From contig NC_057726.1 in assembly GCF_004010195.1 (NCBI RefSeq), positions 62,030,459-62,094,458 on the forward strand: DNA of 64,000 nt, written 5' to 3'. Of this stretch, positions 12,301 through 62,626 are shown piece after piece (position 1 is the stretch's first letter; every line of letters starts with the position of its first letter). The stretch comes from Chiloscyllium plagiosum (Eukaryota). The notes beneath the pieces were generated by a model. The model worked only from the letters and a program-made list of their open reading frames with translations. It ran no database searches and was not told the origin of the DNA. The position numbers were made by a program, and so were the translations under genes.

Positions 12301-12321
12301 TCAAACTGTTGCTTGTCGAAT
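12301..12321 (-). CDS. Gene A exon 7 (last coding exon), IRQATV*; completes the ITIM ILYGR|I
   Basis: Acceptor atcttacag|ATT, phase 0 matching exon 6. TGA at 12303-12301. A further motif MTYTTLNF follows in the same frame. Confidence 0.7.
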   Translation of the reverse strand: MRQATV

Positions 12322-13028
12322 CTGTAAGATTAATGTTTTGATTTGGTGTAAATGAGTCGGCGCCCAAGGCTTAGTGATTATGTTCAATCATCAAAAAATG
12401 GACCGAGATGCAAAAGTAAAGTCGACATGCCCCAGAAATTGAATCAGTGGTGCTGGAAGAGCACAGCAATTCAGGCAGCATCCGACGAGCAGCAAAATCG
12501 ACGTTTCGGGCAAAAGCCCTTCATCCCAGAAATTGCTTGATCATGAGAGGGAGTGGCAACTGATGTCATTTAACCTGAGGATCGCATTTGTCAGGAGAGG
12601 TCAAGATGGTCACAACTTCATGGTGACTTCAGCCAGTACAGGAAACAGTTAAAAATCACTCAATGGCAGGTTATCGTTCAACAGGCTCATTAGTAAATAG
12701 TAGTAAAAAGTGCTGCTTCTTTCATCTGGTGGTTCGTCAACTAGTGCTTCGAAAACTAGTGTTTCCAAATAAACCTGTTGGGCTATAACCTGGTGTTGTG
12801 TGATTTTTAATTTTATCCACGCCAGTCCAGCACTGGCTTCTCCAAATCAAAGGACAGGAAACGACCGCGCACTACTGGTGGCATTCAGCATTGCAAATGG
12901 GCTGCCCAGATAATTCAGCAAAGGAAACCCTGACTTAGATGCAACACACAGCCGCCCCCATGTCCGTTATTCTTGATGGACCATTTGTCACATTTGTGAG
13001 CTTTTTTTGATCTATTGGTCAAACTTAC

Positions 13029-13130
13029 CCGACCGTACAAGATACTTTCATTTTCAAGATTACTAGTTGGACATTTTCTGGCATTGCTCACATCCACTTC
13101 AGCATAATGCACGACCTCAGCCAACTCTCT
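13029..13130 (-). CDS. Gene A exon 6, cytoplasmic ITIM exon RELAEVVHYAEVDVSNARKCPTSNLENESILYGR
   Basis: ccattcag|AGA ... CGG|gtaagt, 102 nt, phase 0/0. VHYAEV fits the ITIM consensus. A homologous 102-nt block exists in gene B at 53283-53384. Confidence 0.85.
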
Positions 13131-13647
13131 CTGAATGGATCAGAAAGGAAGAAAATATTTGGTTATATGGCTACTTCGTTGGCATCAGCATTTCACACAT
13201 CTGGTCATTGGACAGATTAACTTGAACTAGAAATCAAGTGCACAACATAGAACTCATTTGATTAGCATACACTAGAAAGTTAAGACAATATGAATACTAG
13301 AACTGAAATTTAAACTTGTCCTCTTGTACTCAACCTCAATGTTACGAAAAGCGTCTCCTTTCAATGAAAGTTTCTGTCTCATGGAGAGATATAATTGATT
13401 TATAAAGATTTGCAAAGAAAAAGACAATTTACTTGTTAGTTATAAAACATAATTTATTTTTATTCAGTGCTCTGATTCTAAGTGCATTCCTAGTCATTTT
13501 TTTTTTAAAAAAAGACATATCTTGATTGGAAAAATGCTTTCAGTAAGTGCAATTAAAGAGATTTTGACATCAGGTATGAAATAAAAATCTCATGATATTA
13601 AATTCTATTTACATGTTGCATAAGTCAGCATAAGCAAGTCAACATAC

Positions 13648-13691
13648 CATTTCTTCACGACGAGTTGATCTAGTTAAATAGTCTTCTTTAT
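13648..13691 (-). CDS. Gene A exon 5, cytoplasmic (Y)KEDYLTRSTRREEM
   Basis: ggtag|AT ... ATG|gtatgt, 44 nt, phase 1/0. Same length and ends (KED...EM|gtatgt) as the gene B exon at 53984-54027. Confidence 0.8.
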
Positions 13692-14327
13692 CTACCAGTG
13701 AATAAGATTTAATATTTGTAAAAGTTTGAAATATTTACTCAGTTTCCAAACCAGTGAATGCAAAGCTAATTTTAGAATTAGAAGAAAAGAAAACTGAAAG
13801 TTCTCGAGTTCCACATTTTGCTGATAGCATTTGAATTGCCAGCACTTTGAGAATAGGAATTACATGGTAGGGAATGCTCGTTTAGATGCTAGGGGTTTCA
13901 AACAAAATGGGAATGAGTTGTAAATTTCAGTTGCGGAGGTGATTCTGCATTTTTATGCCTGGAAATCAAGCTCACTTGTCCATTCGACCATCTATATAAT
14001 TGCAACTCCGTCGGGGCTTTTTACTCTTCAATTATTTGTTCCTCTACACAATATTTGTGACCATATGGTCATTTGCGAGGGTACCTTTCATTCATCATGT
14101 TGAAAATGGACAAAAAAGAAACATTGCTGCGTTTTACGGCTCATTGTGCACTATTGCATAATGGAATGCTTTTTTTAAACAATTGAGACTTAGTGAAAGC
14201 AAATGCAATGTAATGTTCAATATTAAATCATATTCGAGTTCTCCTTCCCCGGTGTTCCAAAGACAGGCTTTCTTAAATTTCATTCTTAAATAGTTAAGAA
14301 GAGTCAAGGTTTTACAATGAGGCTTAC

Positions 14328-14438
14328 ATTCATTATTTTGCAGTCGACCTCTCTTCTTAATGATGATCAGTAGTACCAAAAAGATCACTCCAAACACGGC
14401 GCATCCAGGCACCCAGAAGTAATGTGAGTTAATACCGT
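14328..14438 (-). CDS. Gene A exon 4, transmembrane DGINSHYFWVPGCAVFGVIFLVLLIIIKKRGRLQNNE
   Basis: tttgcag|AC ... T|gtaagc, 111 nt, phase 1/1. A 20-aa uncharged hydrophobic stretch is followed by the basic stop-transfer KKRGR. Confidence 0.9.
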
Positions 14439-14518
14439 CTGCAAAAATAAGATGTACTTTGGCTAAACATAGTATCCAAGATTTATTGTTTCAACTAAGG
14501 TGCTAACTTTAATAAGTC

Positions 14519-15429
14519 TGTTATTGACAAGACCAAACCTTCTGAAATTTTTCAGAAGATAATCTAGACCATAACGTTTTCTCAGTTAAAGATAAAGGTG
14601 AGGTGTTATTATTCCTGATGAAATTCGATCGGCCAAACTATTGGATTTAAAGCCAAACACGCTTTATTCATTGACTATAGTTAAAACACAACAAAACAAA
14701 AAAGGAATTGGATTAACCTTACCCTATTGGAAAACTTAATAGAACAATACATACATTAACTATCACTAATTAACTGTTCGAATATAGCAACATCCCATAA
14801 ACACACCCTTGGCAAAAGGCAAATTCAGAAAGGAAGTTAGCCTCCAGCGCCAGGGGCCCAGGTTTAATCCCAACCTCAGGCAATTGTCTGTGTAGACTTT
14901 GCACATTCGCCCCGTGCCAGTGTGAGTTTTCTTGGGGTGCTCCAGTTTCTTCCCATAATCCAAAGATGTGCAGGTCAGGTGAATTGACCATGCTAATTGA
15001 CCGTAGTGTTCAGGAATGTGTAGATTAGGTGCATTAGTCAGGAGTAAATGCAAAGTAATAGGGTAGGGGAATGCGTCTGGGTGGGTTACTCTTCGGCAGG
15101 TAGGTGTGGACTTGTTGGGTCAAATGACCTGGTTCCACACTGTAGGGATTCTATCATTCTATGATTTTGGCTGTAACAAAGAGGGAAAAAAATAGCTTCC
15201 AGTTCTTCAAGACCCCAACGGCAACTGCTGAGTGATAAAGCTAAAAATCCTGTTTCTGTAGGAGCTTGACCACACCAATTCAGGCTGCTTCTGTTTTTTC
15301 CAAATTAAAAAAAAAGGTCATCACAAGCTGTTTACTCTAGTGAGTGTGATTTCTCGAAACCTCTGTCTTAAAATCTCTCTCAAAAAAGATAGGGGAAAGT
15401 ACGTCTCTTAAAGCCACAGTATCATCACA
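14519..15429 (-). mobile_element. Solo LTR interrupted by an HE1-like SINE (+ strand, ~14840-15165)
   Basis: Termini tgtta...tcaca with a near-TSD agtc/actc. Shares the aaacacacccttggcaaaagg.aaattca block with the 44009 LTR. The SINE core tccaaagatgtgcaggtcaggtgaattg lies inside. Confidence 0.7.
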
Positions 15430-16541: not shown

Positions 16542-16853
16542 CTTTGTTAAATTTAGTAACAGTATAGGTGACCACAGCCGGGGCCTCGAGAGACACGTGA
16601 GATACCATACAGGTATAATTGTCTTCCATTGGATTCTGGTCTGGATCAGCTAAAGTGCTAGAAACCTTGTACAGTCCCTCAGTGTTCTTCACTACGGCGT
16701 TTTGTGCTTCTAATGCAGTCTCAGCGCCATTTTTATACCAAGTTAGGCTGAAATTTCCCGGAAAAAATGCTGCCGTTTCACACACGACATTCAAAGACAC
16801 TGGTGAAGTTCCTCCAGATGGTCTGTAAACAATCTTAAGTGGGGTTGGTGGAA
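16542..16853 (-). CDS. Gene A exon 3, Ig C1-set domain
   Basis: tttgcag|TT ... AAAG|gtacga, 312 nt, phase 1/1. VPPTP..LNVVCETAAFFPGNFSLTWYKNG..NTEGLYKVSSTL..YTCMVSHVSL carries the C1 hallmarks CxxxxF(F/Y)P, W and YxCxVxH. Confidence 0.93.
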
Positions 16854-18280: not shown

Positions 18281-20860
18281 AGAGAAGTTACCATTGTCGA
18301 GGAGGGTTTGCCTACTGAGTCGGTATGGGTGGAAATTAGGAACAGTAAGGGAACAGTTACCTCATTACTACAGGCCCCACAATAGCAGCAGGGAGATTGA
18401 AGAAAGCATAAGTCGGCAGGTTTTGGAAAAGTGTGAAGGTAGTAGGGTTGTTGTAATGGGTGACTTTAACTTTCCCAATATTGATTGGAACCTCCTTCGA
18501 GCAGATGGTTTTGAAGGAGCTGTTTTTGTAAGGTGTGTTCAGGAGGGTTTCCTAACTCAGCGCGTTGACAGGCCGACGAGGGAAGCGGCCATTTTGGATT
18601 TGGTGATAGACAATGAGCCGGGGCAGGTGTCAGATCTTGCGGTGGGAGAGCATTTTGGTGATAGTGACAACAACTGCCTCACATTCTACCGAGCTATGCA
18701 GAAGGAGAGAAGCAGGTACAATGGGAGGATATTTAATTGGGGAAAAGGAAATTATGATACTATCAGACGTGAGTTGGGAAACATGGACTGGGAGCAATTG
18801 TTCCAAGGAAAGAGCACTATGGACATGTTGAGACTGTTTAAGGAATAGTTGTTGCGAGTGATGCACAAATGTGTTCCTTTGAGACAGGCAAGAAGGGGTA
18901 AGATAAAGGAATATTGGATGACGAGAGCAGAAGAGCTTCTCTTCAAAAGAAAGAAAGCAGCTTACGTAAGATGAAGGAAGCAAGGGCCTCGCTCAGCTCT
19001 AGAGGATTACAGGCAGGTCAGGAAGAAGCTCAAAAATGGTCTGAGGAGAGCCAGGAGGGGGTACGAAAAAGGCTTGGCAGGAAGGATTAGGGAGAATCCA
19101 AAGGCATTTTAGACGTATATGAGGAATAAGAGAATGATCAAAGAAAGAGTAGGGCCGATCAGGGATAGCATAGGGAACTTGTGTACAGAGTCTGAGGACG
19201 TAGAGGAAGCCCTAAATAAGTTTTTTGCTTCTGTCTTCACTAAAGAAAAGGACCTTGTAGTGAATGAAACTATTGAGGAGCAGGTAAGCATGCTGGAACA
19301 GATAAACATTGAGGAAGCTGACGTGTTGAAAATTTTGACAAACATTAAGATTGGCAAGTTGCCAGGGCCAGACCAGATTTGTCCTCGGCTGCTTTGCGAA
19401 GTGAGAAATGGATTGCTTCGCTGCTTGCGAAGATTTTTGCATCCTCGCTCTCCACCGGAGTCGTACCTGAGGACTGGAGGGAGGCAACTGTAATTCCTCT
19501 CTTCAAGAAAGGAAATAGGGAAATCCCCGGCAATTACAGACCAGTCAGTCTCACGTCTGTCGTCTGCAAGGATTCTGAGGGATAGGATTTATGACCATCT
19601 GGAAGAGCATGGTTTGATTAAAGGCAGTCAGCACGGCTTTGTGAGGGGCAGGTCATGCCTCACACATCTTATTGAGTTCTTTGAGGATGTTACTAGACAA
19701 GGTGATGAGGGTCGAGCGGTGGATGTGGTGTATATGAACTTCAGTAAGGCATTTGATAAGGTTCCCCGTGGTAGGCTTGTTCAGAAGGTCAGGAGGAATG
19801 GGATACAGGGAAATTTAGCTGGTCGACAGAAGACATCGAGTGGCAGTGGAAGGAAAATATTCTGCCTGAAAGTGAGTGGTGTTCCACGGGGCTCCGTTCT
19901 TGGGCCTCTACTCTTTGCAATTTTTATTAATGACTTCGATGAGGAGATTGTAGGATGGGTTAGCAAGTTTGCAGGCACCACAAAGGTTGGAGGTGTCGTT
20001 GACAGTATAGAGGACTGTTGTAGGCTGCAGCATGATATTGACAGGATGCAGAGATGGGCTGAGAGGTGGCAGATGGAGTTCAACTTGGATAATGCGAAGT
20101 GATGCATTTTGGAAGGTCTAACTTGAAATTTCAGTACAGGATAAATGACAGGATTCTTAGCAGTGTGGAGGAACAGCGGGATCTTAGTGTGCAGGTGCAT
20201 AGATCACTTAAAATTGCCACCCAGGTGGACAGAGTTGTTAAGAAAGCATATGGTGGTTTGGCTTTCATTAACAGGGTGATTGAGTTTAAGAGCCATGAGA
20301 TATGGTTGCAGCTCTATAAAACGCTGGTTAGACCGCATTTGTGTCCAGTTCTGATCGCCCTATTATAGGAAAGATGTGGATGCTTTGAAGAGGGTTCAGA
20401 GGAGATTTACCAGGATTCTGCCTGGAATGGTGGACTTATCTTACGAAGAGAGGTTCACTGAGCTCTGACTTCTTTAATTAGAAAAAAGAAGGAAGAAAAG
20501 GGACCTAATTGAGGTGTACAAGATAATGAGAGGCATAGATAGAGTTGATAGCTAGAAACTCTTTCCCAGGGCAGAAATTGTTAACACGAGGGGTCATAGT
20601 TTTAAGCTGTTTGGTGGAAAGTATAGAGGGGATGTCAGAGGTGGGTTCTTTACGCAGGGAGTTGTGAGAGCATGGAATGCGTTGCCAGCAGCAGTTGTGG
20701 AAGCAAGGTCATTGGGGATATTTAAGAGGCTGCTGGACATGCATATGGTCACAGAAATTTGAGGGTTCGTACATTAGGTTTACCTTACATGAGGATCAAT
20801 CGTCGGCACAACATCGTGGGCTGAAGGGCCTGTTCTGTGCTGTACTGTTCTATGTTCTAT
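18281..20860 (+). mobile_element. CR1 LINE, 5'-truncated ORF2 (APE-RT) with stops and frameshifts
   Basis: VVVMGDFNFPNIDW, ILDLV, DSD, PGPDQI, NYRPVSLTSVV, QHGFVRGRSCLT, FSKAFDKVP, SGVPRGSVLGPLLF. Tail (tgttcta)n. The hexamer aagata on both sides is a possible TSD. Confidence 0.9.
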
Positions 20861-26644: not shown

Positions 26645-26959
26645 CATAAACAATTAGCTGAGACCCAGTTCCATTTCCTTTAATGATTCCATGACACATC
26701 ACTGCACAGTGATAGACTCCTGAGTCTTGGAAAGTTGCATCCCACAGCTGGAAGGTGCGGTACCATTTCGTTTCCAGACCAAATCGTTTTCTGCCATCGT
26801 CAGTGTCTTGCAAGTATTCAGATTCACCCTGTTTCCACCAGCGCACGGTAAAGCAGGCTACATCCTGAGAGATCGTGAATTTGCACACCCAGGTTATGTT
26901 GCCTCCTCTGGTGATAGTCTCTCTTTTGGGTACTTGGGTCACTCTGAATGAAGTGCGGT
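26645..26959 (-). CDS. Gene A exon 2, Ig V domain with germline-fused J-like G strand
   Basis: ctgcag|AC ... TATG|gtaagt, 315 nt, phase 1/1. DRTSFRVTQVP..GGNITWVCKF..VRWWKQ..FQLWDATFQDSGVYHCAV..KGNGTGSQLIVY has the B-strand Cys, C-strand Trp, DxGxYxC and GxGxxLxV. Confidence 0.93.
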
Positions 26960-27444: not shown

Positions 27445-27499
27445 CTGCAGAAATTATCCCGCGGAGAGTCAGGCACAAGAGAACTAGACGCACTGACAT
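27445..27499 (-). CDS. Gene A exon 1, signal peptide MSVRLVLLCLTLRGIISA
   Basis: ATG at 27499, CAG|gtaact, 55 nt, phase 1. Same length and VLLCL core as the gene B leader. Confidence 0.88.
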
Positions 27500-31530: not shown

Positions 31531-31792
31531 GATTAGATTAGATTAGATTCCCTCTGGTGTGGAAACAGGCCTTTCAGCCCAACACCGTCCCTCCGAAGAG
31601 TAACCCACCCAGACCCATTTCCATCTGACTAATGCACCTAACACTATGGGCAATTTAACACGGCCAATTCACCTGACCTGCACATCTTTGGACTGTGGGA
31701 GGAAACCGGAGCACCCGGCGGAAAACCCCCCTCCCCCCCACCCCCTCCCCACAGACACTGGGAGAATGTGCAAACTCCACACAGACAGTCAG
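31531..31792 (-). mobile_element. HE1-like SINE, 5'-truncated
   Basis: Same core as 10394-10701, with a (aatct)n tail. Confidence 0.8.
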
Positions 31793-47893: not shown

Positions 47894-48900
47894 CTTCTGA
47901 GGTTCAATAGGCAGGAAATTCACAATGAATGAGAGGAGATTGTGTTGGATTAAGGAGTGCAGGGATCTTGCAGTGCATGTCCACAAATTGTGAAGGGTAG
48001 CAGGACAGATCAGCTTGGAGACTGATTTTAGTAAATATAAACCGAAACAACTGCAGGTGTTGTAAATCAGTGAGAGACAAATGCTGGAAAAACTTAGCAG
48101 ATGTGGAGAGAAATCAGAACTGAATTCTGAGGAAGGATCACTCGACCCGATATGTTAACTTTGGTGTCTGTCCACAGATGTTGATACACCTGCTGAGCTT
48201 TTCCAGCAATTTCTATTTTTGTCTCTTCACTTCTTATTCCCTTGTCAGCAACGTCAATATGATAATAACAACGATTGTGAAGAGTCTTTGAGTAAAAGAG
48301 CGCGGTGACTGTTAAGAACACGTGACGTGATGGTATCGATGATTTCTGTTTGATGTTTCCTGTATGTTCCGTTGTATAATATCCTCCTTCCCCTTCCCTT
48401 CTGAGGTTCAATAGGCAGGAAATTCACAATGAATGAGAGGAGATTGTGTTGGATTAAAGAGTGCAGGGATCTTGCAGTGCATGTCCACAAATTGTGAAGG
48501 GTAGCAGGACAGATCAGCTTGGAGACTGATTTTAGTAAATATAAACCGAAACAACTGCAGGAGTTGTAAATCAGTGAGAGACAAATGCTGGAAAAACTTA
48601 GCAGATGTGGAGAGAAATCAGAACTGAATTCTGAGGAAGGATCACTCGATCCGATATGTTACTTTGGTCTATGTCCACAGATGTTGACACACCTGCTGAG
48701 CATTTCCAGCAATTTCTATTTTTGTCTCTTCACTTCTTATTCCCTTGTAGGAACGTCAATATGATAATAACAACGATTGTGAGGAGTCTTTGAGTAAAAG
48801 AGCGCGGTGAATGTTAAGAACACATGACGTGATGGTATCGATTATTTCTGTTTGATGTTTCCTGTATGTTCCGTTGTATAATATCCTCCTTCCCCTTCCC
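47894..48900. repeat. Tandem duplication, period 504 bp
   Basis: cttctgaggttcaatagg begins at both 47894 and 48398. The units differ by scattered substitutions and small indels. Confidence 0.9.
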
Positions 48901-50785: not shown

Positions 50786-51461
50786 NNNNNNNNNNNNNNN
50801 NNNNNNNNNNNNNNNNNNNNNNNNNNNNNNNNNNNNNNNNNNNNNNNNNNNNNNNNNNNNNNNNNNNNNNNNNNNNNNNNNNNNNNNNNNNNNNNNNNNN
50901 NNNNNNNNNNNNNNNNNNNNNNNNNNNNNNNNNNNNNNNNNNNNNNNNNNNNNNNNNNNNNNNNNNNNNNNNNNNNNNNNNNNNNNNNNNNNNNNNNNNN
51001 NNNNNNNNNNNNNNNNNNNNNNNNNNNNNNNNNNNNNNNNNNNNNNNNNNNNNNNNNNNNNNNNNNNNNNNNNNNNNNNNNNNNNNNNNNNNNNNNNNNN
51101 NNNNNNNNNNNNNNNNNNNNNNNNNNNNNNNNNNNNNNNNNNNNNNNNNNNNNNNNNNNNNNNNNNNNNNNNNNNNNNNNNNNNNNNNNNNNNNNNNNNN
51201 NNNNNNNNNNNNNNNNNNNNNNNNNNNNNNNNNNNNNNNNNNNNNNNNNNNNNNNNNNNNNNNNNNNNNNNNNNNNNNNNNNNNNNNNNNNNNNNNNNNN
51301 NNNNNNNNNNNNNNNNNNNNNNNNNNNNNNNNNNNNNNNNNNNNNNNNNNNNNNNNNNNNNNNNNNNNNNNNNNNNNNNNNNNNNNNNNNNNNNNNNNNN
51401 NNNNNNNNNNNNNNNNNNNNNNNNNNNNNNNNNNNNNNNNNNNNNNNNNNNNNNNNNNNNN
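50786..51461. other. Assembly gap (676 N)
   Basis: Run of N. Confidence 1.
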
Positions 51462-52771: not shown

Positions 52772-53271
52772 NNNNNNNNNNNNNNNNNNNNNNNNNNNNN
52801 NNNNNNNNNNNNNNNNNNNNNNNNNNNNNNNNNNNNNNNNNNNNNNNNNNNNNNNNNNNNNNNNNNNNNNNNNNNNNNNNNNNNNNNNNNNNNNNNNNNN
52901 NNNNNNNNNNNNNNNNNNNNNNNNNNNNNNNNNNNNNNNNNNNNNNNNNNNNNNNNNNNNNNNNNNNNNNNNNNNNNNNNNNNNNNNNNNNNNNNNNNNN
53001 NNNNNNNNNNNNNNNNNNNNNNNNNNNNNNNNNNNNNNNNNNNNNNNNNNNNNNNNNNNNNNNNNNNNNNNNNNNNNNNNNNNNNNNNNNNNNNNNNNNN
53101 NNNNNNNNNNNNNNNNNNNNNNNNNNNNNNNNNNNNNNNNNNNNNNNNNNNNNNNNNNNNNNNNNNNNNNNNNNNNNNNNNNNNNNNNNNNNNNNNNNNN
53201 NNNNNNNNNNNNNNNNNNNNNNNNNNNNNNNNNNNNNNNNNNNNNNNNNNNNNNNNNNNNNNNNNNNNNNN
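52772..53271. other. Assembly gap (exactly 500 N, probably a placeholder size)
   Basis: Run of N starting just downstream of gene B's ITIM exon. Confidence 1.
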
Positions 53272-53282
53272 CTCAGATCTAC

Positions 53283-53384
53283 CTAAATATACACAGTTCT
53301 CATCTTTTCAAGTTTGAGCCTTGGAGTTTTCGTTTTTCTGTTCAAATCCAGCACAGCGTAATGCATGACCTCAGAATCTACTCC
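53283..53384 (-). pseudogene. Gene B decayed ITIM exon (GVDSEVMHYAVLDLNRKTKTPRLKLEKMRTVYI*)
   Basis: Colinear 102-nt homolog of gene A exon 6. The acceptor position (53386-53385) is CG instead of AG, and the last codon before the gt donor is TAG. Confidence 0.75.
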
Positions 53385-53983
53385 CGACATTGGTGACAAA
53401 TAAAAATATTTTTTGATTGGCAAGTCTATTATACTTAGCAGTTATCTTGTGCAAATTATAACACTTTGATCGTGAAACATATGTGATGTAGTCTGGACGC
53501 TGCAACAAATAAGTAAACCCATCAACGTTGATACAACGTGAGTGCTTTGGGAATGTTTACATCAAACAAAATGGTACAACTTAAAATTTCTTTTCAATTC
53601 CCAAGTATAGAGGAATTTGCCATTTAAAAATATTTTCAGTGCAATGAGCATCTTTAATCTCTAATAACGTGTCAGTTATATTCCCAGCAAAACCCTAAGT
53701 AGCAAATAAACATCCATAAAATAAATTAAAAGTGTTCTGAAGAAGAGTCACTGGACTGGAAACATGCTCTTTTTTTTCACCACAGATGCTACCAGACCTG
53801 TTACGTTTATCCAGCAATTTCAGTTTTAAATAACTTACATACCGGACATGATTATCTTAGTGAGACTTGGCAAATATTTTTTACGAAACTGTGTTAAACT
53901 GTCCTGACATAGTTGTGGGTTGAACATTCCATTATAGCATTTTTTTTTGATGCAGGTATTTCGACATTAACGAATAGACATAC

Positions 53984-54027
53984 CATCTCCCCACCGTGGT
54001 TTGCTCCAGCTACAGCGTCCTCTTTAC
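53984..54027 (-). CDS. Gene B exon 5, cytoplasmic (G)KEDAVAGANHGGEM
   Basis: tttccag|GT ... ATG|gtatgt, 44 nt; homolog of 13648-13691. Confidence 0.82.
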
Positions 54028-54660: not shown

Positions 54661-54768
54661 CTTTAGTATTCTTCAGCTGACAGCACACTCCAATTACAAT
54701 AATAAGGAACGCACTACCAGCCACCGCACGAATGAGAATCCAATGATAATGTGACTTCTGAATATTAT
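54661..54768 (-). CDS. Gene B exon 4, transmembrane with Arg: DNIQKSHYHWILIRAVAGSAFLIIVIGVCCQLKNTK
   Basis: cttgcag|AT ... AAAG|gtaaga, 108 nt, phase 1/1. Aligns with the gene A TM exon (SHYxW...AVxG). Confidence 0.88.
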
Positions 54769-56204
54769 CTGCAAGATCATTAGTAAAAATGTAGATCACT
54801 AGGAACTCCCTTCCTAACGGCTAAGTGGGTGTCCTAAAACAAATTCATTGCAGTGGTTCAAGAAGGCAGCTCACCACCATCTTCTAAAAGGAAATTAGAG
54901 ATGAATATTAAGGCTCATTCAGTGACACCTGAATCACATAAATGAATAAAAAATGTGGTGGAACCTGAGCGAAAAGTAATCTTCTGCACGTTTGATTGTT
55001 TAAGCTGGTGGTTTCACCAACCTCGCTTTAGTTAACTACAGTAAAAATGAATAAATTCAACTTAATATTTGAAGCCAAGCTATGCAAAATAAATTCTTTC
55101 TCGAAAAGGTGAAATTTCCTTGACTCATTTGGAAGTGGCCTATGGTTTAAGAGTTTAAAATGTGAGACGAATCAATATCCCATAAGCAAACGGTTTGCAC
55201 TTGTTCTTAGAAATCCTCACAGTGGAAGGAAACTTGAAGATTTTTGAGCAGTATTTCCTCCTTGACTGCAAAAATTGTAAAATGCAGCAATCGATTACAA
55301 ATCGCCTTCTACTATCTTAACTCGTCTTACCAGCACCAGGATGACATTGCCGCTAGACAAAGTCACCATCGTCTTATCAGATTGTAGGGTTTTCCTATCA
55401 CTGGTGAGAAATGATTGGAGATGTTTTCAGCTGAGGGTCACTACGCCTCAGGCAGGGAGAGAGATTAAGAAGGAGAGCCCTATACTAGTAATCTTAGCTA
55501 GTGTGAGAATTGAGCCCAAGCTGCTTTGGTCCCTGAACACTACTAGTCAGCTGTCTAGCCAACTTGAGATAATCGGCCAACATTGGAGCCAAGCAGATGT
55601 TAACAGCAATGTGTTTGTTTACCCACATAAACGAACTAATGTATCACTCAATTGAAGACCACATAGGGATGTGCAATAAGTGCTGGTCTTGCCAGCGATG
55701 TCTATATCTCATAAAAGAATTGGGCACAAAATGTAGCTGGTCGATCTCCTCACTGAAACTTGTTGAAAAACACAATGCATTGAACAGAGCATACTGCAAC
55801 GAGTTTTGGGCACAGTTTAAATAGAAATACATCAATCACATCCCCGTTAAACATTTTCAGAACTTGGCAGTTGAAGTTAAGCAGGCGATTAATTTCAGAC
55901 TTGTTCATGGAAAGCATTTGGGGCAGTAGTGGAACTTAAATTCCGAAAGGTCATTTCACAGATTCATCCCTATAGCTGTTGCCGATCGTCCTGATACAAG
56001 AAAGAAAACATGGACAAAATAATAGAGTAAGAAGTAGAAACTTTGTTTACTATTGCTGCATCAGCAACAAAAGGAATTTGGTTGAACCAAGCAAATTTCA
56101 ATATCTGGCAAAACATCATTTTCGTTATGCCCAGATTGAATTCTATTGCAAAAATACAGATTTAATGTATTTTAACAATATTTTCCACGATCCTTCCACA
56201 GACA

Positions 56205-56860
56205 TAATTAAAAAGCAACCAACACCAGATTATAGCCCAACAGTTTTATTTGGAAGTACTAGCTTTTAGAGCGCTGCTCTTTTGGCAGGTAGGTAGTGAG
56301 GCAGTAGCATGCAACACAGAATTTAGAGCACAAGATCATAGTATTATGCAACTGATACGCTATATTCAATATTCAGTGTATCACATCAGATTGGATTACA
56401 GTGTGGAAACAGGCCCTTCGGCGCAACAAGTCCACACCGACCCACGAAGCGCAACCCACCCATACCCTACATTTGCCCCTTACCTAACACTAAGGGGAAA
56501 TTTAGCATGGCCAATTCACCGAACCTGCACATCTTTGGACTGTGGGAGAAAACCGGAGCACCCAGAGGAAACCCACACAGACACGGGGAGAATGTGCAAA
56601 CTCCACACAGTCAGTCGTCTGAGGCGGGAATTGAACCCAGGTCTCTGGTGCTGAGGCAGCAGTGCTAACGACTGTGCCACCGTGCATGACACTATGACCT
56701 TGTGCTATGAATTCTGTGTCTTATGGTCCTGCCCCACTAGCTCCCTGACGAAGGAGCAGCGTTATGAAAGCTAGTACTTCCAAATAAACCTTTTGGACTA
56801 CAACCTGGTGTTGTGCGATTTTTAACTTTGTACACCCCAGTCCAACACCGATACCTCCTC
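56205..56860. mobile_element. Penelope-derived fold-back element with an HE1-like SINE inserted (56389-56684, minus strand)
   Basis: The arms are reverse complements. The SINE is absent from the duplicate copy at 61318-61680. Confidence 0.75.
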
Positions 56861-56946
56861 AACATATCTTCATCATAACATTACGTATAGTGTATCTATG
56901 AACTGAATAGTGCATGTGTCTCCTTCTTATGTTTTAACTTTCATAC

Positions 56947-57258
56947 CTTGGTTAGATTCATAAAATGTATAGGTGATAACAGTTGGTGACCTCAGTGAGA
57001 CATGAGATACCGAACAGCTATAATTGGTGCCGCTCAGGACAGGTCCTGTCTCAACCAAAAAACTGGAAACTTCATACAGTCCCTCGGTGTTCTTTATTTT
57101 ACTAGTATTGGTTCTTAATGCAGTTTCAACGCCATTTTTATACCATGTAAGGGAGAAATTTTCCGGATAAAATGCAGCCGTTTCACACTTTAGTGTTAAA
57201 GAAGTGGAGGAATTCCCTTCGGATAGCCTGGAGCCAGTGATCGTGGGTGTTGGGGCTG
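56947..57258 (-). CDS. Gene B exon 3, Ig C1-set domain
   Basis: ttgcag|CAG (NAGNAG acceptor) ... CAAG|gtatga, 312 nt. LTLKCETAAFYPENFSLTWYKNG..NTEGLYEVSSFL..NYSCSVSHVSL; about 54% identical to gene A C1 with no gaps (hand count 56/104). Missed by the ORF track. Confidence 0.93.
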
Positions 57259-57973
57259 CTGCAAATCACAGAATAAAAAAGTCATTACGGCACAATATTG
57301 AGAAACAAAAGCATTTAACTTCTCATTTTCGTTCGCTTTATACTTTCACAATAGGTCTTATTAATTCTAAACTCTTATCATTTTAATTGTCACACCTCAT
57401 GTATAGCGCACGTTAGAAATAAATGGCATATTGTCAATTTTATTAGGTTGTAAAGTTTAAGGCTTAAAATTACTCACTGCATGAGAGGCAACAATTTGCT
57501 ACCCAACGTTTAGTTTACAAAGGCGTAAGCCTCGGTGAGCAAGTTGTTGAGCCAAGCCTTTGTGCATTAAATGATCAGTGATTTGCACGTTCTTCGTGAA
57601 GTGGTTTAACTGTGTCGGCATAGTTCTCTATCAGACCATCACAATTTATGCAATATACTTTGTTCATTTGAATATCAGGAGATTTCAGCAATAAGTCTGT
57701 CTATGTTATATTAATTGCATGTCAACATTTCCATTATTGAGTGAATCAGTCAAAAGTCAGCTGCCACACTTGCATCCAAATCCTCACACTATCATCGCCT
57801 TAGATATTCTTTATCTAATTACAGTTGAATACAAAAAGCTTGGATTTACAACTAACATGCTGAAAAATACATTAATAGATATTATATTGCTGAGAAAAAT
57901 GCACTGAATAGTCACTTCACATCACTGATTAATATAATGCCGCATGTCTTTTTCTCCTATATTTCAAACTAAC

Positions 57974-58294
57974 CGTACACAGTTAAACGCGATCCGGTTC
58001 CATTGCCTTTAACTTCTCCCTGGCGGATCACGGTGCAGTGATAGATTCCAGCGTCTTGGATTGTCACACCCAGCAGCTGAAGGAAACCGCTTGCTCTACT
58101 TGCCATCCCAAACCTCTTTCTCTTGTCTGTGCTTGTACGCAAGTATTCATTCTCGGCATGTTTCCACCATAACACCCGTACCCAGGTTTGGTCGTTCGAG
58201 AGAGGAAATATGCAGTAGAAGGTGGTACTCTCTCCTCTGAGAACTTTCGCTTCTTCAGGTGCTTGAGACACAGTGAATGAAGTGTGGTCCGCAG
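57974..58294 (-). CDS. Gene B exon 2, VJ-type Ig V domain
   Basis: tgctag|CT ... TACG|gttagt, 321 nt. DHTSFTVSQAP..FYCIF..LWWKH..LQLLGVTIQDAGIYHCTV..KGNGTGSRLTVY; about 47% identical to gene A V with no gaps (49/105). Confidence 0.93.
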
Positions 58295-58453: not shown

Positions 58454-58508
58454 CTGTCCGACCAGTGGTCCAGAAAATCAGGCACAGAAGCACCGTTTTT
58501 GTTCTCAT
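58454..58508 (-). CDS. Gene B exon 1, signal peptide MRTKTVLLCLIFWTTGRT
   Basis: ATG at 58508, CAG|gtgtca (weak donor), 55 nt, homologous to the gene A leader. Confidence 0.8.
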
Positions 58509-59576
58509 CCTTTCTTCAGATTGCTGACTCTCTGCTGCAACTGCAAATGTGTGATTGTTGAAAAATGGTTTGAGATTGTTTTTTTTATCAGTGACGTTGC
58601 AATTACATTTGACATCCGGCAAGTGTGGGTTTAGAAATTATGCTTTGTAAAATGCAATGTTCTAAACATTCCAAGCATTGACCACCCGGAATTACATATG
58701 TAATGGAAAATACAGTGTGTAAGGAAAAGTATTAATTTTCTTCTGCTGAATTTCCTAACACTTCTGGAGTCAGTTTTGTTTCAAAAAGGACAGCGCCACA
58801 AGCACGGAGTTCAGTGGTGAAGTGCTACCGAATTGTGATATGTTTGAGAAGCTTACCAGAGCGAACCTGGGGTGGGCCAGTGCCAGCAGAACGTCCCAAT
58901 CAAATCATGAGGGGTGAGACCAAGATCGAACTCAGTTGGAGCAGCAACAGGAGCAGAACTGACCATCACCGAATCCAGCAGTGGCGGTCCTGAGGTGATT
59001 TCAGGATTCAAGAAGAGACATGGAGAAACAGGAAGCAACTGATTGGGGTGGAGATGAAGAAACATTGTGAGGATTTGAGGCAGGATGGAGGAATTATCCC
59101 ACAGTAGCGGAAAATTATCTTCATTAGCTGGCAAGCAACTGTTAATTGAAATACATGTTCAAATTGCTTTAGGATTAAAATGTAAATATGAGAAATTATA
59201 GATTAACGAACTGAATACCACTTGAAAACATAATAAGCCAATTGAATGTCGGTTAAACAAAACAGAGACACAGGGTCAGGCAATGTGCTGCACTTGGATG
59301 AAGTGTGGGTTGGTGGACCCCGTTTAGGTTCAGTGACAAGATGTGTAACAAGCTTTGATTGCTCGAGGAACTCTGGCTCGGAATTGATGAGCTGGAGTCT
59401 GAGCTTTGAACACTGTAATATTTCAGGGAGGGGAGACTTATTTGAAAGCTAAGTTGCAGCAGGAGAAACCCCTTTGATTACCATCCCTGAATCGGACCAC
59501 TGGATTGGAACAAGAAGTTACGTCAATGAATGAGGTAGATATAAGGATCCAGAATGTGGCACAGTAGCAACCTCAG

Positions 59577-60037
59577 NNNNNNNNNNNNNNNNNNNNNNNN
59601 NNNNNNNNNNNNNNNNNNNNNNNNNNNNNNNNNNNNNNNNNNNNNNNNNNNNNNNNNNNNNNNNNNNNNNNNNNNNNNNNNNNNNNNNNNNNNNNNNNNN
59701 NNNNNNNNNNNNNNNNNNNNNNNNNNNNNNNNNNNNNNNNNNNNNNNNNNNNNNNNNNNNNNNNNNNNNNNNNNNNNNNNNNNNNNNNNNNNNNNNNNNN
59801 NNNNNNNNNNNNNNNNNNNNNNNNNNNNNNNNNNNNNNNNNNNNNNNNNNNNNNNNNNNNNNNNNNNNNNNNNNNNNNNNNNNNNNNNNNNNNNNNNNNN
59901 NNNNNNNNNNNNNNNNNNNNNNNNNNNNNNNNNNNNNNNNNNNNNNNNNNNNNNNNNNNNNNNNNNNNNNNNNNNNNNNNNNNNNNNNNNNNNNNNNNNN
60001 NNNNNNNNNNNNNNNNNNNNNNNNNNNNNNNNNNNNN
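59577..60037. other. Assembly gap (461 N)
   Basis: Run of N. Confidence 1.
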
Positions 60038-62626
60038 ATCACATAAATGAATAAAAAATGTGGTGGAACCTGAGCGAAAAGTAATCTTCTGCACGTTTGA
60101 TTGTTTAAGCTGGTGGTTTCACCAACCTCGCTTTAGTTAACTACACTAAAAATGAATAAATTCAACATGCTATTTGAAGCCAAGCTACGCAAAGTAAATT
60201 CTTCTCCGAAAAGGTGAAATTTCCTTGACTCATTTGGAAGTGGCCTATGGTTTAAGAGTTTAAAATGTGAGACGAATCAATATCCCATAAGCAAACGGTT
60301 TGCACTTGTTCTTAGAAATCCTCACAGTGGAAGGACATTTGAAGATTTTTGAGCAGTATTTCCTCCTTGCCTGCAAAAATTGTAAAATACAGCAATCGAT
60401 TACAACTCACCTTCTATTATCTTAACTGGTCTTACCAGCACCAGAATGACATTGCCGCTAGACAAAGTCACCATCGTCTTATCAGATTGTAGAGTTTTCC
60501 TATCACTGGTGAGAAATGATTGGAGATGTCTTAAGCTGAGGGTCACTACGCCTCAGGCAGGGAGAGAGATTAAGAAATAGAGTCCTATATTAGTAACCTT
60601 AGCTGGTGTGAGAATTCAGCCCAAGCTTCTTTGGTCCCAGAACACTACTAGTCAGCTGTCCAGCCAACTTGAGACAATCGGCCAACATTGGAGCCAAGCA
60701 AATGTTAACAGCAATGTGTTTGTTTACCCACATAAACGAACTAATGTATCACTCAATTGAAGACCAATTAGGGATGTGCAATAAGTGCTGGTCTTGCCAG
60801 CAATGTCTATATCCCATAAAAGAATTGGGCACAAAATGTAGCTGGTCGATTTCCTCACTGAAACTTGTTGAAAACACAATGCATTGAACAGAGCACACTG
60901 TAACGAGTTGTGGGCACAGTTTAAATGGAAATACATCAATCACATCCCCGTTAAACATTTTCAGAACTTGGCAGTTGAAGTTAAGCAGGCGATTAATTTC
61001 AGACTTGTTCACGGAAAGCATTTGGGGCAGTATTAGAACTTAAATTCCGAAAGGTCATTTCACAGATTCATCCCTATAGCTGTTGCCGATCGTCCTGATA
61101 CAAGAAAGAAAACATGGACAAAATAATAGAGTAAGAAGTAGAAACTTTGTTTACTATTGCTGCATCAGCAACAAAAGGAATTTGGTTAAACCAAGCAAAT
61201 TTCAATATCTGGCAATACACCATTTTCGTTATGCCCAGATTGAATTCTATTGCAAAAGTACAGATTTAATGTATTTTAACAATATTTTCCACGATCCTTC
61301 CACGGACTGTCTCCATAATTAAAAAGCAACCAACACCAGATTATTGCCCAACAGTTTTATTTGGAAGTACTAGCTTTCATAGCGCTGCTCTTTTGGCAGA
61401 TAGGTAGTGAGGCAGTATCATATAACACAGAATTTAGAGCACAAGATCATAATATTATGCAACCGCTATGATATACTCAATATTCAGTGTATCATATCAG
61501 TTGCATGACACTATGATCTTGTGCTATGAATTCTGTGTCTTATGGTCCTGCCCCATTAGCTCCCTGACGAAGGAGCAGCGTTATGAAAGCTAGTACTTCC
61601 AAATAAACCTGTTGGACTACAACCTGGTGTTGAGCGATTTTTAACTTTGTACACCCCAGTCCAACACCGATACCTCCTCAACATATCTTCATCATAACAT
61701 TACGTATAGTGTATCTATGAACTGAATAGTGCATGTGTCTCCTTCTTATGTTTTAACTTTCATACCTTGGTTAGATTCATAAAATGTATAGGTGATAACA
61801 GTTGGTGACCTCAGTGAGACATGAGATACCGAACAGCTATAATTGGTGCCGCTCAGGACAGGTCCTGTCTCAACCAAAAAACTGGAAACTTCATACAGTC
61901 CCTCGGTGTTCTTTATTTTACTAGTATTGGTTCTTAATGCAGTTTCAACGCCATTTTTATACCATGTAAGGGAGAAATTTTCCGGATAAAATGCAGCCGT
62001 TTCACACTTTAGTGTTAAAGAAGTGGAGGAATTCCCTTCGGATAGCCTGGAGCCAGTGATCGTGGGTGTTGGGGCTGCTGCAAATCACAGAATAAAAAAG
62101 TCATTACGGCACAATATTGAGAAACAAAAGCATTTAACTTCTCATTTTAGTTCGCTTTATTCTTTCACAATAGGTCCTATTAATTCTAAACTCATCTTTT
62201 TAATTGTCACACCTCATCTATAGCGCACGTTAGAAATAAATAGCATATTGTCAATTTTATTAGGTTGTAAAGTTTAAGGCTTAAAATTACTCACTGCATG
62301 AGAGGCAACAATTTGCTACCACCGTTTAGGTTTACAAAGGTGTAAGCCTCGGTGAGCAAGTTGTTGAGCCAAGCCTTTGTGCATTAAATGATCAGTGATT
62401 TACACGTTCTTGGTGAAATGGTTTAACTGTGTCGGCATAGTTCTCTATCAGACCATCACAATTTATGCAATATACTTTGTTCATTTGAATAGCAGGAGAT
62501 TTCAGCAATAAGTCTGTCTATGTTATATTAATTGCATGTCAACATTTCCATTATTGAGTGAATCAGTCAAAAGTCAGCTGCCACACTTGCATCCAAATCC
62601 TCACACTATCATCGCCTTAGATATTC
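60038..62626. repeat. Direct segmental duplicate of 54933-57808
   Basis: Near-identical throughout apart from scattered SNPs and indels and the missing SINE. Similarity ends at gccttagatattc, followed by a CR1-type 3' tail (62627-62690). Confidence 0.95.
61766..62077 (-). CDS. Gene C (or other haplotype of gene B) Ig C1 exon
   Basis: By eye, nucleotide-identical to 56947-57258 with intact splice sites. No V, leader or TM exon for it is visible in the window. Confidence 0.75.

What the first reader, a model, noticed from the sequence alone, without database searches (positions are those of the whole stretch)
12301..62077. Tandem cluster of non-rearranging VJ-C1 antigen-receptor-like genes forming a paired inhibitory/activating family in a shark
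Seen: two leader-V-C1-TM-tail genes (A: 7 coding exons, 319 aa; B: exons 1-5 intact) with matching exon phases and nearly matching exon lengths (55, 315/321, 312, 111/108, 44, 102), plus a third C1 copy. Each V exon already contains its J-like G strand (GNGTGSxLxVY), and I found no RSS. Known: germline VJ-type V joined to C1-set domains is rare outside Ig/TCR (SIRPs and the avian/amphibian VJ-C1 genes have it; NKp30 has VJ alone), and it is the architecture proposed for the pre-RAG ancestor of antigen receptors. Inferred: this is a multigene innate receptor family in cartilaginous fish, with TCR/IgL-like ectodomains and opposing signalling, perhaps not yet described as such.
Basis: partly seen in the sequence, partly recalled or inferred. 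Interest (0 to 1): 0.92.

Follow-up and report, generated by a model that had tools for sequence, protein, structure and literature searches.

The report
Shark SIRP-like paired V-C1 receptor genes
Two neighbouring shark genes encode surface receptors built from one antibody-like variable domain and one constant domain, one wired to inhibit and one to activate; they belong to a large gene family found in all cartilaginous fishes that databases label SIRP-like and that I found described in no paper.

Summary
On the minus strand, gene A (27499-12301; 7 exons, 319 codons) and gene B (58508-53984; exons 1-5) are leader/V/C1/TM genes. Each V exon carries its own J-like strand and runs straight into a splice donor. 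No RSS-like site was found in the window.

A has an uncharged TM and two ITIM-type tyrosines. B has a TM arginine, and its ITIM exon is a relic that cannot be read in frame.

The third C1 is a partial duplicate: 2.6 kb, 95-98% identical to B, exon 312/312 identical. An assembly gap bounds one side and unrelated DNA the other, with no V or TM exon. No gap cuts an exon.

These are not orphan genes. They fall within a family of at least 85 stored proteins from 19 chondrichthyan species, with inhibitory and activating forms interleaved. RefSeq names them inconsistently, mostly 'SIRP-alpha-like'.

Closest solved relatives are UrIg2 and SIRP-alpha. The SIRP architecture (V-C1-C1) is not met. The PRARP architecture fits but could not be tested.

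First-stage notes of this scan, unchecked, describe similar genes elsewhere in this genome.

The parts
27445..27499 (-). Gene A exon 1: start codon and leader (MSVRLVLLCLTLRGIISA + 1 nt), donor GTAACT
   Evidence: The leader matches Heptranchias family members P0161 and P0162 (..LCLTLRGII..).
26645..26959 (-). Gene A exon 2: V domain with built-in J-like strand (..KGNGTGSQLIVY). Extra Cys pair at residues 35 and 88 of the exon.
   Evidence: V-set 24.2 bits, below the cut-off of 26; tblastn E to 8e-35.
16542..16853 (-). Gene A exon 3: C1-set domain
   Evidence: (C1-set 40.4 bits, cut-off 21).
14328..14438 (-). Gene A exon 4: stalk and uncharged transmembrane segment (..FWVPGCAVFGVIFLVLLIII KKR..)
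   Evidence: 2 of 12 family proteins hit it; matches P0162 ..FYFWVPICAVAGLVFLVL...
13648..13691 (-). Gene A exon 5: cytoplasmic, 44 nt (KEDYLTRSTRREEM)
   Evidence: Similar to P0162 ..GPTRREEL...
13029..13130 (-). Gene A exon 6: cytoplasmic, two tyrosine motifs (V-H-Y-A-E-V ITIM; I-L-Y-G-R-)
   Evidence: Aligns with ..EIVHYVALDLS..RTVYAQ.. of P0162.
12301..12321 (-). Gene A exon 7: IRQATV plus stop. Weak polypyrimidine tract before the acceptor.
   Evidence: It did not pass my pyrimidine filter.
58454..58508 (-). Gene B exon 1: leader (MRTKTVLLCLIFWTTGRT + 1 nt), donor GTGTCA
57974..58294 (-). Gene B exon 2: V domain with J-like strand (..KGNGTGSRLTVY)
   Evidence: V-set 34.2 bits; E 2.9e-41 to a catshark protein.
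56947..57258 (-). Gene B exon 3: C1-set domain
   Evidence: (44.6 bits).
54661..54768 (-). Gene B exon 4: stalk and transmembrane segment with Arg (..HWILIRAVAGSAFLIIVIGVCC..)
   Evidence: Arg at the equivalent place in P0006, P0167 and others.
53984..54027 (-). Gene B exon 5: 44 nt (KEDAVAGANHGGEM). Leaves phase 0 after 840 nt.
   Evidence: 63.6% nt identity to A exon 5.
53283..53390 (-). Gene B relic of the ITIM exon (..EVMHYAVLDLNRKTKTPRLKLEKMRTVYI*). There is no AG at the homologous acceptor, Met sits at Y-2, and a stop falls one residue after the second Tyr.
   Evidence: (P0025 hit). Close to P0161 ..EIVHYAALDLSKARKTPRLKGEEERTVYAQ...
61766..62077 (-). Third C1 exon, 312/312 nt identical to B's
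60038..62629 (-). Duplicated segment matching B's 54933-57812 (94.9% and 98.1% identity). It starts at the gap and ends 160 nt short of the position of B's V exon.
   Evidence: 21 differences in 819 flanking nt, 0 in the 312-nt exon, P about 3e-4.
59577..60037 (.). Assembly gap. It hides whatever follows the third copy on its 3' side.
52772..53271 (.). Assembly gap 12 nt downstream of B's relic exon. B's 3' end is unread.
18294..20368 (+). LINE fragments (endonuclease and reverse-transcriptase ORFs) inside gene A's 9.8-kb V-to-C1 intron, antisense to the gene

Best explanation
Genes A and B are two members of a large, non-rearranging V(J)-C1 receptor family of the immunoglobulin superfamily, found throughout cartilaginous fishes.

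Each gene encodes a type I membrane protein: leader, one V domain whose G strand is encoded in the same exon, one C1-set domain, a short stalk, a TM segment and a tail.

Gene A is the inhibitory type. Its TM is uncharged and its tail carries an ITIM (VHYAEV) and a second tyrosine motif (ILYGRI). Inferred mechanism: ligand binding by the V domain leads to tyrosine phosphorylation and recruitment of SHP-type phosphatases.

Gene B is the activating type. It has an Arg in the outer third of the TM, which I infer pairs with an acidic TM residue of an ITAM adaptor of the FcR-gamma, CD3-zeta or DAP12 kind. Its short tail arises because the ancestral ITIM exon has lost its acceptor and can no longer be read in frame.

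B most likely arose from an inhibitory ancestor, as activating partners of KIR, LILR and SIRP did (recalled knowledge).

Shown: exon structure, domains, motifs, family membership, absence of RSS. Inferred: expression, signalling partners, ligand.

The third C1 is a recent partial duplicate of B whose completeness the assembly gap hides.
For: - Exon models have GT-AG at every border and matching phases.
- Domains: Pfam C1-set and V-set.
- The V exon of B finds 184 representatives at E<=1e-3, 77 at <=1e-10 and 6 at <=1e-30.
- Of 30 clusters whose names I looked up, 29 are chondrichthyan. The 30th is a scallop multi-Ig protein.
- 10 of 10 homologues tested show one V-set and one C1-set domain.
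- RefSeq models of other species run V-C1-TM-tail across the same junctions and the same motifs as my exons.
- Among 85 stored members, my script rules give 35 inhibitory-type, 18 activating-type, 18 other and 14 without TM.
- In V and C1 trees, A and B sit in the same 15-row subclade (SH-aLRT 95 and 97). The activating/inhibitory label needs 12 and 13 changes, so the types interleave.
- B's relic exon retains clear similarity to live ITIM exons but has no in-frame acceptor.
- There are 0 RSS-like sites.
Against: - There is no transcript evidence from this species.
- A's exon 7 acceptor has a weak pyrimidine tract.
- A's V-set score is below Pfam's cut-off.
- B's 3' end lies beside a gap, so an undetected downstream exon cannot be excluded.
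- The activating/inhibitory classes rest on simple motif rules, not on experiments.
- A and B are too divergent (46% and 54%) to be assumed to share a ligand.
Confidence: 0.8

Rival explanations
1. They are true orthologues or co-orthologues of the SIRP family (SIRP-alpha-type and SIRP-beta-type). On this reading the SIRP family dates to the jawed-vertebrate ancestor and merely lost or never gained the second C1 domain in cartilaginous fish.
For: - RefSeq names most members SIRP-alpha-like or SIRP-beta-like.
- The family profile aligns to SIRP-alpha (2wng) across V plus first C1 in one stretch at 64.0 bits. It also matches SIRP-alpha's third domain at 47.2 bits. That is the best single C1 match among the five chains whose alignments were printed.
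- SIRP-gamma scores 97.6 bits.
- Language-model features of the elephant-shark member P0012 are nearest to SIRP-alpha clusters, at 0.97.
Against: - There is one C1 domain, not two.
- UrIg2 scores higher overall, at 124.8 bits.
- The lambda V-C stretch scores about the same, at 66.5 bits.
- SIRP V domains are absent from the best 60 PDB matches of B's V exon.
- B's TM has Arg, whereas SIRP-beta's TM residue is Lys (recalled).
- A table passage of a 2026 survey lists the SIRP family under Tetrapoda (PMC13262535).
- No tree with real SIRPs could be built here.
Confidence: 0.25
2. They are the cartilaginous-fish counterparts of PRARP. PRARP genes are the non-rearranging VJ-C1-TM-ITIM genes described from chicken, with orthologues in reptiles, amphibians and bony fish.
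For: - The architecture is identical as far as I recall the abstract of Fu et al. 2019 (J Immunol 202:1992). I saw only its citation, in passages of PMC10751288 and PMC11599192.
- A whitefish (Coregonus, a teleost) V-C1 fragment, P0214, aligns to the family profile with hhalign probability 96%.
Against: - This is not tested. The paper is not held and no PRARP sequence was available from any tool.
- P0214 is an unnamed, fragmentary model.
- The exhaustive V search returned only chondrichthyan names among the 29 family clusters I looked up.
Confidence: 0.2
3. They are B7-H6-type (B7 family) ligands rather than receptors.
For: - Some members are named 'NCR3 ligand 1-like' or 'CD276 homolog' in RefSeq.
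- C2-set_2 (CD80-like) and butyrophilin Ig-C models give secondary hits.
- A first-stage note reports an NKp30-like pseudogene 3.6 kb beyond the window (unchecked).
Against: - C1-set is the best model for every C exon.
- ITIM tails paired with Arg-TM short-tail forms are a receptor signature.
- No B7-H6 chain is among the best 60 PDB matches of the family profile.
Confidence: 0.05
4. The third C1 copy is an assembly artefact, a second haplotype or collapsed read set placed beside a gap, not a real third gene.
For: - It starts exactly at the gap and carries only part of B's structure.
- It has no V, TM or tail exons on either side.
Against: - 2.6-5% divergence in the flanks is more than I would expect between two haplotypes (my own judgement, no call).
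- The similarity ends cleanly 160 nt before the V exon, at unrelated sequence.
Confidence: 0.25
5. The V exons are rearranging antigen-receptor segments.
For: The V domains match TCR-alpha and lambda V best among solved structures.
Against: - The J-like strand is in the V exon and is followed at once by a GT donor.
- There are 0 RSS-like sites in the window.
- Germline RefSeq models in 19 species read V-J-C1 without rearrangement.
Confidence: 0.01

Closest known systems
SIRP family (SIRP-alpha, -beta, -gamma)
   Same: - V domain with a germline J-like strand joined to C1-set domains.
- Clustered genes with ITIM-bearing inhibitory forms and basic-TM, short-tail activating forms.
- High profile score to solved SIRP-alpha and SIRP-gamma and nearest language-model clusters.
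- RefSeq naming.
   Different: - One C1 domain instead of two.
- Arg rather than Lys in the TM (the SIRP-beta residue is recalled).
- The V exon alone does not retrieve SIRP V domains in its best 60 PDB hits.
- Ligand unknown.
- Found so far only in cartilaginous fish among the clusters I looked up.
[quoted passage not shown] 2019, abstract recalled, paper not held)
   Same: Non-rearranging VJ exon, single C1, TM and an ITIM-type tail, with tightly linked genes.
   Different: Described from bony vertebrates, and I recall no cartilaginous-fish members. Sequence relationship untested here.
UrIg / UrIg2 (shark non-rearranging antibody-like genes; PMC12227049, abstract and passages read)
   Same: Shark, with a germline VJ exon and C1-type domains. 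UrIg2 (9dmx) is the second-best chain in the PDB profile search, 124.8 bits over three stretches.
   Different: [quoted passage not shown] The window genes have one C1, ITIM or Arg-TM signalling, and belong to a large multigene family.
NKp30 (NCR3)
   Same: Non-rearranging VJ-type V. The activating form has a TM Arg (recalled). A first-stage note places an NKp30-like pseudogene just beyond the window (unchecked).
   Different: NKp30 has no C domain. The window genes each have a C1 exon.
Other paired VJ-type receptor families of lower vertebrates: teleost NITRs, hagfish APAR, lamprey TCR-like/NICIR (recalled)
   Same: Germline V domains with J-like strands, in activating and inhibitory versions, in multigene clusters.
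   Different: These lack a C1-set domain (recalled). Not compared by sequence here.

Membership tests
SIRP family | N-terminal V-set domain with germline-encoded J-like G strand | tested here: met
SIRP family | Two membrane-proximal C1-set domains (V-C1-C1) | tested here: not met
   There is one C1 exon per gene. 10 of 10 homologues have a single C1-set stretch.
SIRP family | Inhibitory member with ITIM tyrosines, and an activating member with a basic TM residue and short tail | tested here: met
   Sequence level only: A has VHYAEV and ILYGR(I), B has a TM Arg and a dead ITIM exon. Family-wide there are 35 inhibitory-type and 18 activating-type of 85.
SIRP family | Closest sequence relatives are SIRPs | tested here: inconclusive
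   SIRP-alpha scores 110.4 bits, behind UrIg2 at 124.8 and level with the lambda V-C stretch. Atlas features are nearest SIRP-alpha at 0.97. No SIRP is in the best 60 hits for the V exon alone. No tree with SIRPs was possible.
SIRP family | Binds CD47; orthologous chromosomal neighbourhood | not testable with these tools
PRARP | Non-rearranging VJ exon + one C1 + TM + ITIM-type tail (definition recalled from the abstract) | tested here: met
   Gene A architecture.
PRARP | Sequence orthology to chicken, amphibian or teleost PRARP | not tested
   The paper is not held and no PRARP sequence was returned by any tool.
UrIg / UrIg2 | VJ domain followed by several C1-type domains, dimeric antibody-like molecule | tested here: not met
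   A single C1 exon is followed by the TM exon. UrIg2 is described with nine C domains.
NKp30 (NCR3) | Single VJ domain directly followed by stalk/TM, no C domain | tested here: not met
   A C1 exon is present in both genes.
Rearranging antigen receptor chains (IgL, TCR) | V segment flanked by an RSS, with separate J segments | tested here: not met
   0 RSS-like sites were found, and the J-like strand lies inside the V exon before a GT donor.
Rearranging antigen receptor chains (IgL, TCR) | Aromatic residue (F/W) before G-x-G in the J strand, part of the V-V interface (recalled knowledge) | tested here: not met
   0 of 65 family V domains with the motif have F, W or Y there. Asn occurs in 49, and 46 of those form an N-G-T/S sequon.
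B7 family / B7-H6 | V + C ectodomain acting as a ligand for CD28/NKp30-type receptors | tested here: inconclusive
   C2-set_2 and butyrophilin Ig-C give weaker secondary hits than C1-set. Some RefSeq names are B7-like. No B7-H6 is in the best 60 profile hits. The function itself is not testable here.

The most novel reading that the evidence does not exclude
This chondrichthyan-wide V(J)-C1 family is the surviving cartilaginous-fish branch of the lineage that also gave rise to the SIRPs and/or PRARPs. Paired SIRP-type receptors would then date to the jawed-vertebrate ancestor rather than to tetrapods. Its V domain keeps the J strand of antigen receptors but has replaced the interface aromatic residue with a glycosylation sequon. 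It would therefore be an antigen-receptor-like V-C1 unit fixed as a non-pairing, germline innate receptor that repeatedly spawns activating versions.
Probability: 0.3. Interest if true: 0.6.

Novelty: new member of a known kind. Interest (0 to 1): 0.45.

Why it matters
Non-rearranging VJ-C1 genes are the class of molecule from which immunoglobulins and T-cell receptors are thought to have arisen. Cartilaginous fish are the oldest lineage with that adaptive system.

A large family of such genes, conserved from chimaeras to sharks and rays, has both inhibitory and activating wiring. That makes it a candidate for the main germline 'paired receptor' system of these animals, and a natural outgroup for dating SIRP and PRARP.

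At present it exists only as inconsistently named automatic gene models. A proper phylogeny, expression map and ligand search would fill a real gap.

For this particular window the result is more modest. It holds two ordinary members of that family plus a fragment.

Tried and rejected
- Atlas: the protein-atlas search could not read the two window exons. As the tool suggested, I used the stored elephant-shark homologue P0012 instead.
First-stage notes list MHC-type findings only on other pieces of this genome (8 of 43 shown), which proves nothing either way.
- Relatives outside cartilaginous fish: the word-indexed searches returned family members, reptile multi-V proteins and a few teleost models. 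These were 33 proteins at E<=1e-5; 42 at E<=1e-6, with only the 8000 best candidates scored. The pre-filter cannot see SIRPs, so their absence there means nothing. I left the third search of this kind unused for that reason.
- Trees with SIRP, PRARP, NKp30, B7-H6, IgL and TCR were not built, because no tool returned those sequences as usable records and I may not type them from memory.
- Literature: ten searches found no paper describing this family in cartilaginous fish. One search was badly posed and dominated by shark terms. One search ('non-receptor type substrate 1' + shark) found 0 papers. Papers not held: Fu 2019, Flajnik 2012 (41), Ohta & Flajnik 2015 (42), Flajnik 2023 (43), Ohta 2019 (90). 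Any of these, or supplements that I could not open, may mention the family, so 'not in print' is not shown.
- Third copy: I looked for its V exon and its TM and tail exons and found none.
- The joined (spliced) protein was never assembled or searched. Exons were searched one by one, and full-length comparisons used database proteins only.

Full report
WHAT IS THERE

The window is AT-rich vertebrate DNA with three N runs: 50786-51461, 52772-53271 and 59577-60037.

- Gene A: 27499..27445 (55 nt leader), 26959..26645 (315, V), 16853..16542 (312, C1), 14438..14328 (111, stalk/TM), 13691..13648 (44), 13130..13029 (102), 12321..12301 (18 nt plus stop). That is 960 nt, or 319 codons, with phases 1,1,1,1,0,0.
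- Gene B: 58508..58454 (55), 58294..57974 (321), 57258..56947 (312), 54768..54661 (108), 54027..53984 (44).
- A third C1 exon lies at 62077..61766.

Pfam calls the three C exons C1-set at 40.4-44.6 bits (cut-off 21). The V exons are V-set at 34.2 bits for B and 24.2 for A, the latter under the cut-off of 26.

The 9.8-kb V-to-C1 intron of A holds LINE endonuclease and reverse-transcriptase ORFs on the other strand. Another LINE lies at 38.9-42 kb.

THE GAPS

None of the N runs falls in an exon of A or of B exons 1-5.

- The 52772-53271 gap begins 12 nt beyond B's relic exon, so B's 3' end is unread.
- The 59577-60037 gap touches the third copy exactly where its similarity to B starts. By B's spacing, that copy's TM exon would fall in the gap.

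I did not fill or bridge any gap.

NON-REARRANGING V

Both V exons end ...KGNGTGSxLxVY and are followed at once by the donor.

HMMER aligns this stretch to the J region of a TCR-alpha chain. The Asn falls on the J phenylalanine, and G-T-G-S falls on G-x-G-T.

A scan for a heptamer (CAC, at most 1 mismatch) and a nonamer (at most 2 mismatches) at spacers 11-13 or 22-24 found 0 sites in the whole window.

SIGNALLING PARTS

A's TM (..FWVPGCAVFGVIFLVLLIII..) is uncharged. Its exon 6 reads ..EVVHYAEVDVS..ESILYGR, which is an ITIM and a second I-x-Y motif completed by exon 7.

B's TM reads ..HWILIRAVAGSAFLIIVIGVCC.., with Arg in the outer third.

Downstream of B's exon 5 lies a recognisable copy of the ITIM exon at 53390..53283, reading ..EVMHYAVLDLNRKTKTPRLKLEKMRTVYI*.

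- It is 58% identical in DNA to A's exon 6.
- It is close to the live exon of a Heptranchias (sevengill shark) family member.
- The homologous acceptor is CG instead of AG.
- The two nearby AGs put the exon out of frame. One gives an immediate TAG, the other a stop after 11 codons.
- The residue at Y-2 is Met.
- A stop follows one residue after the second Tyr.

This agrees with the first-stage note s1-885803. B therefore looks like an activating receptor derived from an inhibitory one. That is inferred from sequence, not shown by RNA.

THE THIRD COPY

Self-comparison shows 54933-56400 matching 60038-61510 at 94.9%, and 56683-57812 matching 61502-62629 at 98.1%.

The C1 exon is 312/312 identical. 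The 819 flanking nt of the second block carry all 21 differences. The chance of no difference in 312 nt at that rate is about 3e-4.

No V exon lies in 62078-64000, and no TM or tail exon lies at 58600-59576.

It is either a real partial or complete duplicate whose 3' part is in the gap, or a misplaced haplotype. The exon's perfect conservation fits selection, gene conversion or lower exon diversity between haplotypes, and does not decide between them.

THE FAMILY

An exhaustive phmmer search of B's V exon against 1.84 billion representatives gave 184 proteins at E<=1e-3, 77 at <=1e-10 and 6 at <=1e-30.

I looked up names for 30 clusters. 29 are chondrichthyan and one is a scallop hemicentin-like protein that scores by summing many Ig domains.

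With, the species are:

- Sharks: Scyliorhinus canicula and S. torazame, Mustelus asterias, Heterodontus francisci, Heptranchias perlo, Chiloscyllium plagiosum and C. punctatum, Hemiscyllium ocellatum, Stegostoma tigrinum, Rhincodon typus, Cetorhinus maximus.
- Rays and skates: Hypanus sabinus, Hemitrygon akajei, Mobula hypostoma and M. birostris, Pristis pectinata, Leucoraja erinacea, Narcine bancroftii (a V-only relative).
- Chimaera: Callorhinchus milii.

The family therefore predates the shark-chimaera split.

The source names are inconsistent: SIRP-alpha-like (the most frequent), SIRP-beta-1-like, SIRP-gamma-like, tapasin-related-like, NCR3 ligand 1-like, CD276 homolog, MHC class II beta-like, TCR beta-like, and uncharacterized.

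- 10 of 10 members scanned have one V-set and one C1-set stretch.
- Their sequences run across the same junctions as my exons (..L-I-V-H/Y | V/A-P-P-T-P-L-K..) and share A's leader, TM and tail motifs. This is indirect support for the splice models.

PAIRED SIGNALLING IS A FAMILY TRAIT

85 stored proteins have a full V and a full C1. Simple script rules classify them as follows:

| Class | Count |
|---|---|
| Inhibitory-type (ITIM/ITSM-like motif in the tail) | 35 |
| Activating-type (R/K in the outer TM, short tail, no motif) | 18 |
| Other | 18 |
| Without a TM (partial or secreted models) | 14 |

Quick maximum-likelihood trees of V (106 columns) and C1 (103 columns) put A and B in the same 15-row subclade. 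Support is SH-aLRT 95 and 97. The subclade also holds horn shark, sevengill, catshark, smooth-hound, zebra shark and ray members.

The activating/inhibitory label needs 12 (V) and 13 (C1) changes among the 53 labelled rows. Several near-identical V domains carry opposite labels, for example P0106/P0112.

These trees have few columns and many unresolved forks, and are drawn at the midpoint only.

A and B themselves are 46% (48/104) identical in V and 54% (56/103) in C1. They are two family members of opposite type, not a matched pair.

THE V DOMAIN

Among 75 distinct V domains (the two window exons included), 65 carry G-x-G-[ST]-x-[LVI]-x-[VI].

The residue before the motif is never F, W or Y (0 of 65). 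It is Asn in 49, and 46 of the 65 form an N-G-T/S sequon.

In Ig and TCR that aromatic residue lies in the V-V interface (recalled knowledge). A glycan there would argue for an unpaired V, as in SIRP or NKp30. This is inference.

Column entropy is highest in the stretches equivalent to CDR1, C'-C''/CDR2 and CDR3, and low at C, WWKxGE, RKRF, QDSGxYxC and GNGTGSxLxV.

A's V has an extra Cys pair at exon residues 35 and 88, as note s1-886012 said.

NEAREST KNOWN FAMILIES

B's V exon alone matches TCR-alpha and lambda V domains best in the PDB, at E about 5e-5 to 2e-4. PD-L1, amphioxus VJ-C2 and VNAR are further down, and no SIRP or NKp30 is in the best 60.

A 30-member family profile scores as follows:

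| PDB chain | Total bits | Stretches |
|---|---|---|
| UrIg2 (9dmx) | 124.8 | 55.1 + 27.1 + 37.4 |
| SIRP-alpha (2wng) | 110.4 | 64.0 across V plus first C1 in one stretch; 47.2 for the third domain |
| SIRP-gamma | 97.6 | not printed |
| Lambda V-C stretch of an antibody model (2rcj) | n/a | 66.5 |

Whole-chain scores sum over domains, so the ranking favours multi-domain chains.

Language-model features of the elephant-shark member P0012 are nearest to SIRP-alpha clusters (0.97, 208-209 of 256 features), followed by light-chain-like and CD33 clusters.

The family thus looks and probably works like SIRPs, but fails the V-C1-C1 architecture test.

PRARP has, as I recall its abstract, exactly this V-C1-TM-ITIM architecture in bony vertebrates. 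I could not read the paper or obtain a sequence. It is cited as a VJ gene in passages of PMC10751288 and PMC11599192.

UrIg/UrIg2 are shark VJ genes with many C domains (PMC12227049, abstract and passages), and so differ in build.

A table passage of a 2026 survey of human IgSF families lists the SIRP family under Tetrapoda (PMC13262535).

LITERATURE

Ten full-text searches found no description of this family in cartilaginous fish. A 2019 review of fish immunity does not contain 'SIRP' or 'ITIM' (PMC6795676, term search only).

Several key subscription papers and all supplements were out of reach, so I cannot say the family is unpublished.

WHAT I COULD NOT DO

- There was no structure prediction (closed).
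- There was no neighbourhood look-up in other genomes (closed).
- There was no tree with SIRP, PRARP, NKp30, B7-H6, IgL or TCR.
Exons were searched singly.

VERDICT

These are two non-rearranging V(J)-C1 receptor genes of opposite signalling type, plus a fragment.

They are ordinary members of a large, chondrichthyan-wide, SIRP-like family that is already present in public annotation. First-stage notes of this scan (unchecked) describe similar genes elsewhere in this genome.

The family as a whole deserves a proper study. This window adds a clear example of an activating gene that still carries its dead ITIM exon.

Noticed in passing
window 26645-26959 (gene A V exon): There is an extra cysteine pair at exon residues 35 (CDR1-equivalent) and 88 (CDR3-equivalent), in addition to the canonical pair at 25 and 84. 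It could form a loop-stapling disulfide like those of shark VNAR and camelid VHH. B lacks it.
   Followed up: partly
family-wide; window 26646-26690 and 57975-58020 (J-like strands): The position of the J-segment Phe/Trp is Asn in 49 of 65 family V domains. It forms an N-G-T/S glycosylation sequon in 46, and is never aromatic.
   Followed up: partly
proteins P0178, P0046, P0183, P0213 (turtles) and P0184 (wall lizard): These reptile proteins are made of two to six tandem V domains. In the two I read (P0178, P0213) nearly every V domain ends in a G-N/T-G-T-x-V-T-I J-like strand. P0213 has a TM Arg, and a script excerpt shows one in three further turtle proteins (P0181, P0182, P0185). They are the best non-chondrichthyan matches to the shark family profile (to 220 bits) and may be another unstudied VJ-type receptor family.
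   Followed up: no
protein P0214 (Coregonus): This fragmentary teleost model has two V-J-like strands (GNGSNLIV, GNGTTVIV), each followed by a C1-like domain. hhalign probability to the shark family is 96%. It may be a bony-fish relative or a PRARP-type gene.
   Followed up: partly
proteins P0011, P0015, P0066, P0068, P0108, P0119, P0122: These are chondrichthyan relatives with the same V domain but no C1 domain. P0011 from the elephant shark goes from V straight to TM and a multi-tyrosine tail. The family therefore also has V-only members, which recall NKp30 or NITR.
   Followed up: no
window 27-536 (+): A 169-aa ORF carries a ..CIRCSQCGLFYIGETRRLLAERFREHL.. stretch that looks like the GIY-YIG endonuclease part of a Penelope-like retroelement. 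That label is recalled and was not scanned.
   Followed up: no
window 10403-10696, 14840-15010, 31557-31790, 45470-45670 and copies in B's intron 3: A short interspersed repeat (about 150-300 nt, 73-89% identity between copies, both orientations) is scattered through the window, including the introns of A and B.
   Followed up: no
window 47894-48900: There is a tandem duplication of about 505 nt at 97% identity (47894-48398 against 48398-48900) in the intergenic region.
   Followed up: no
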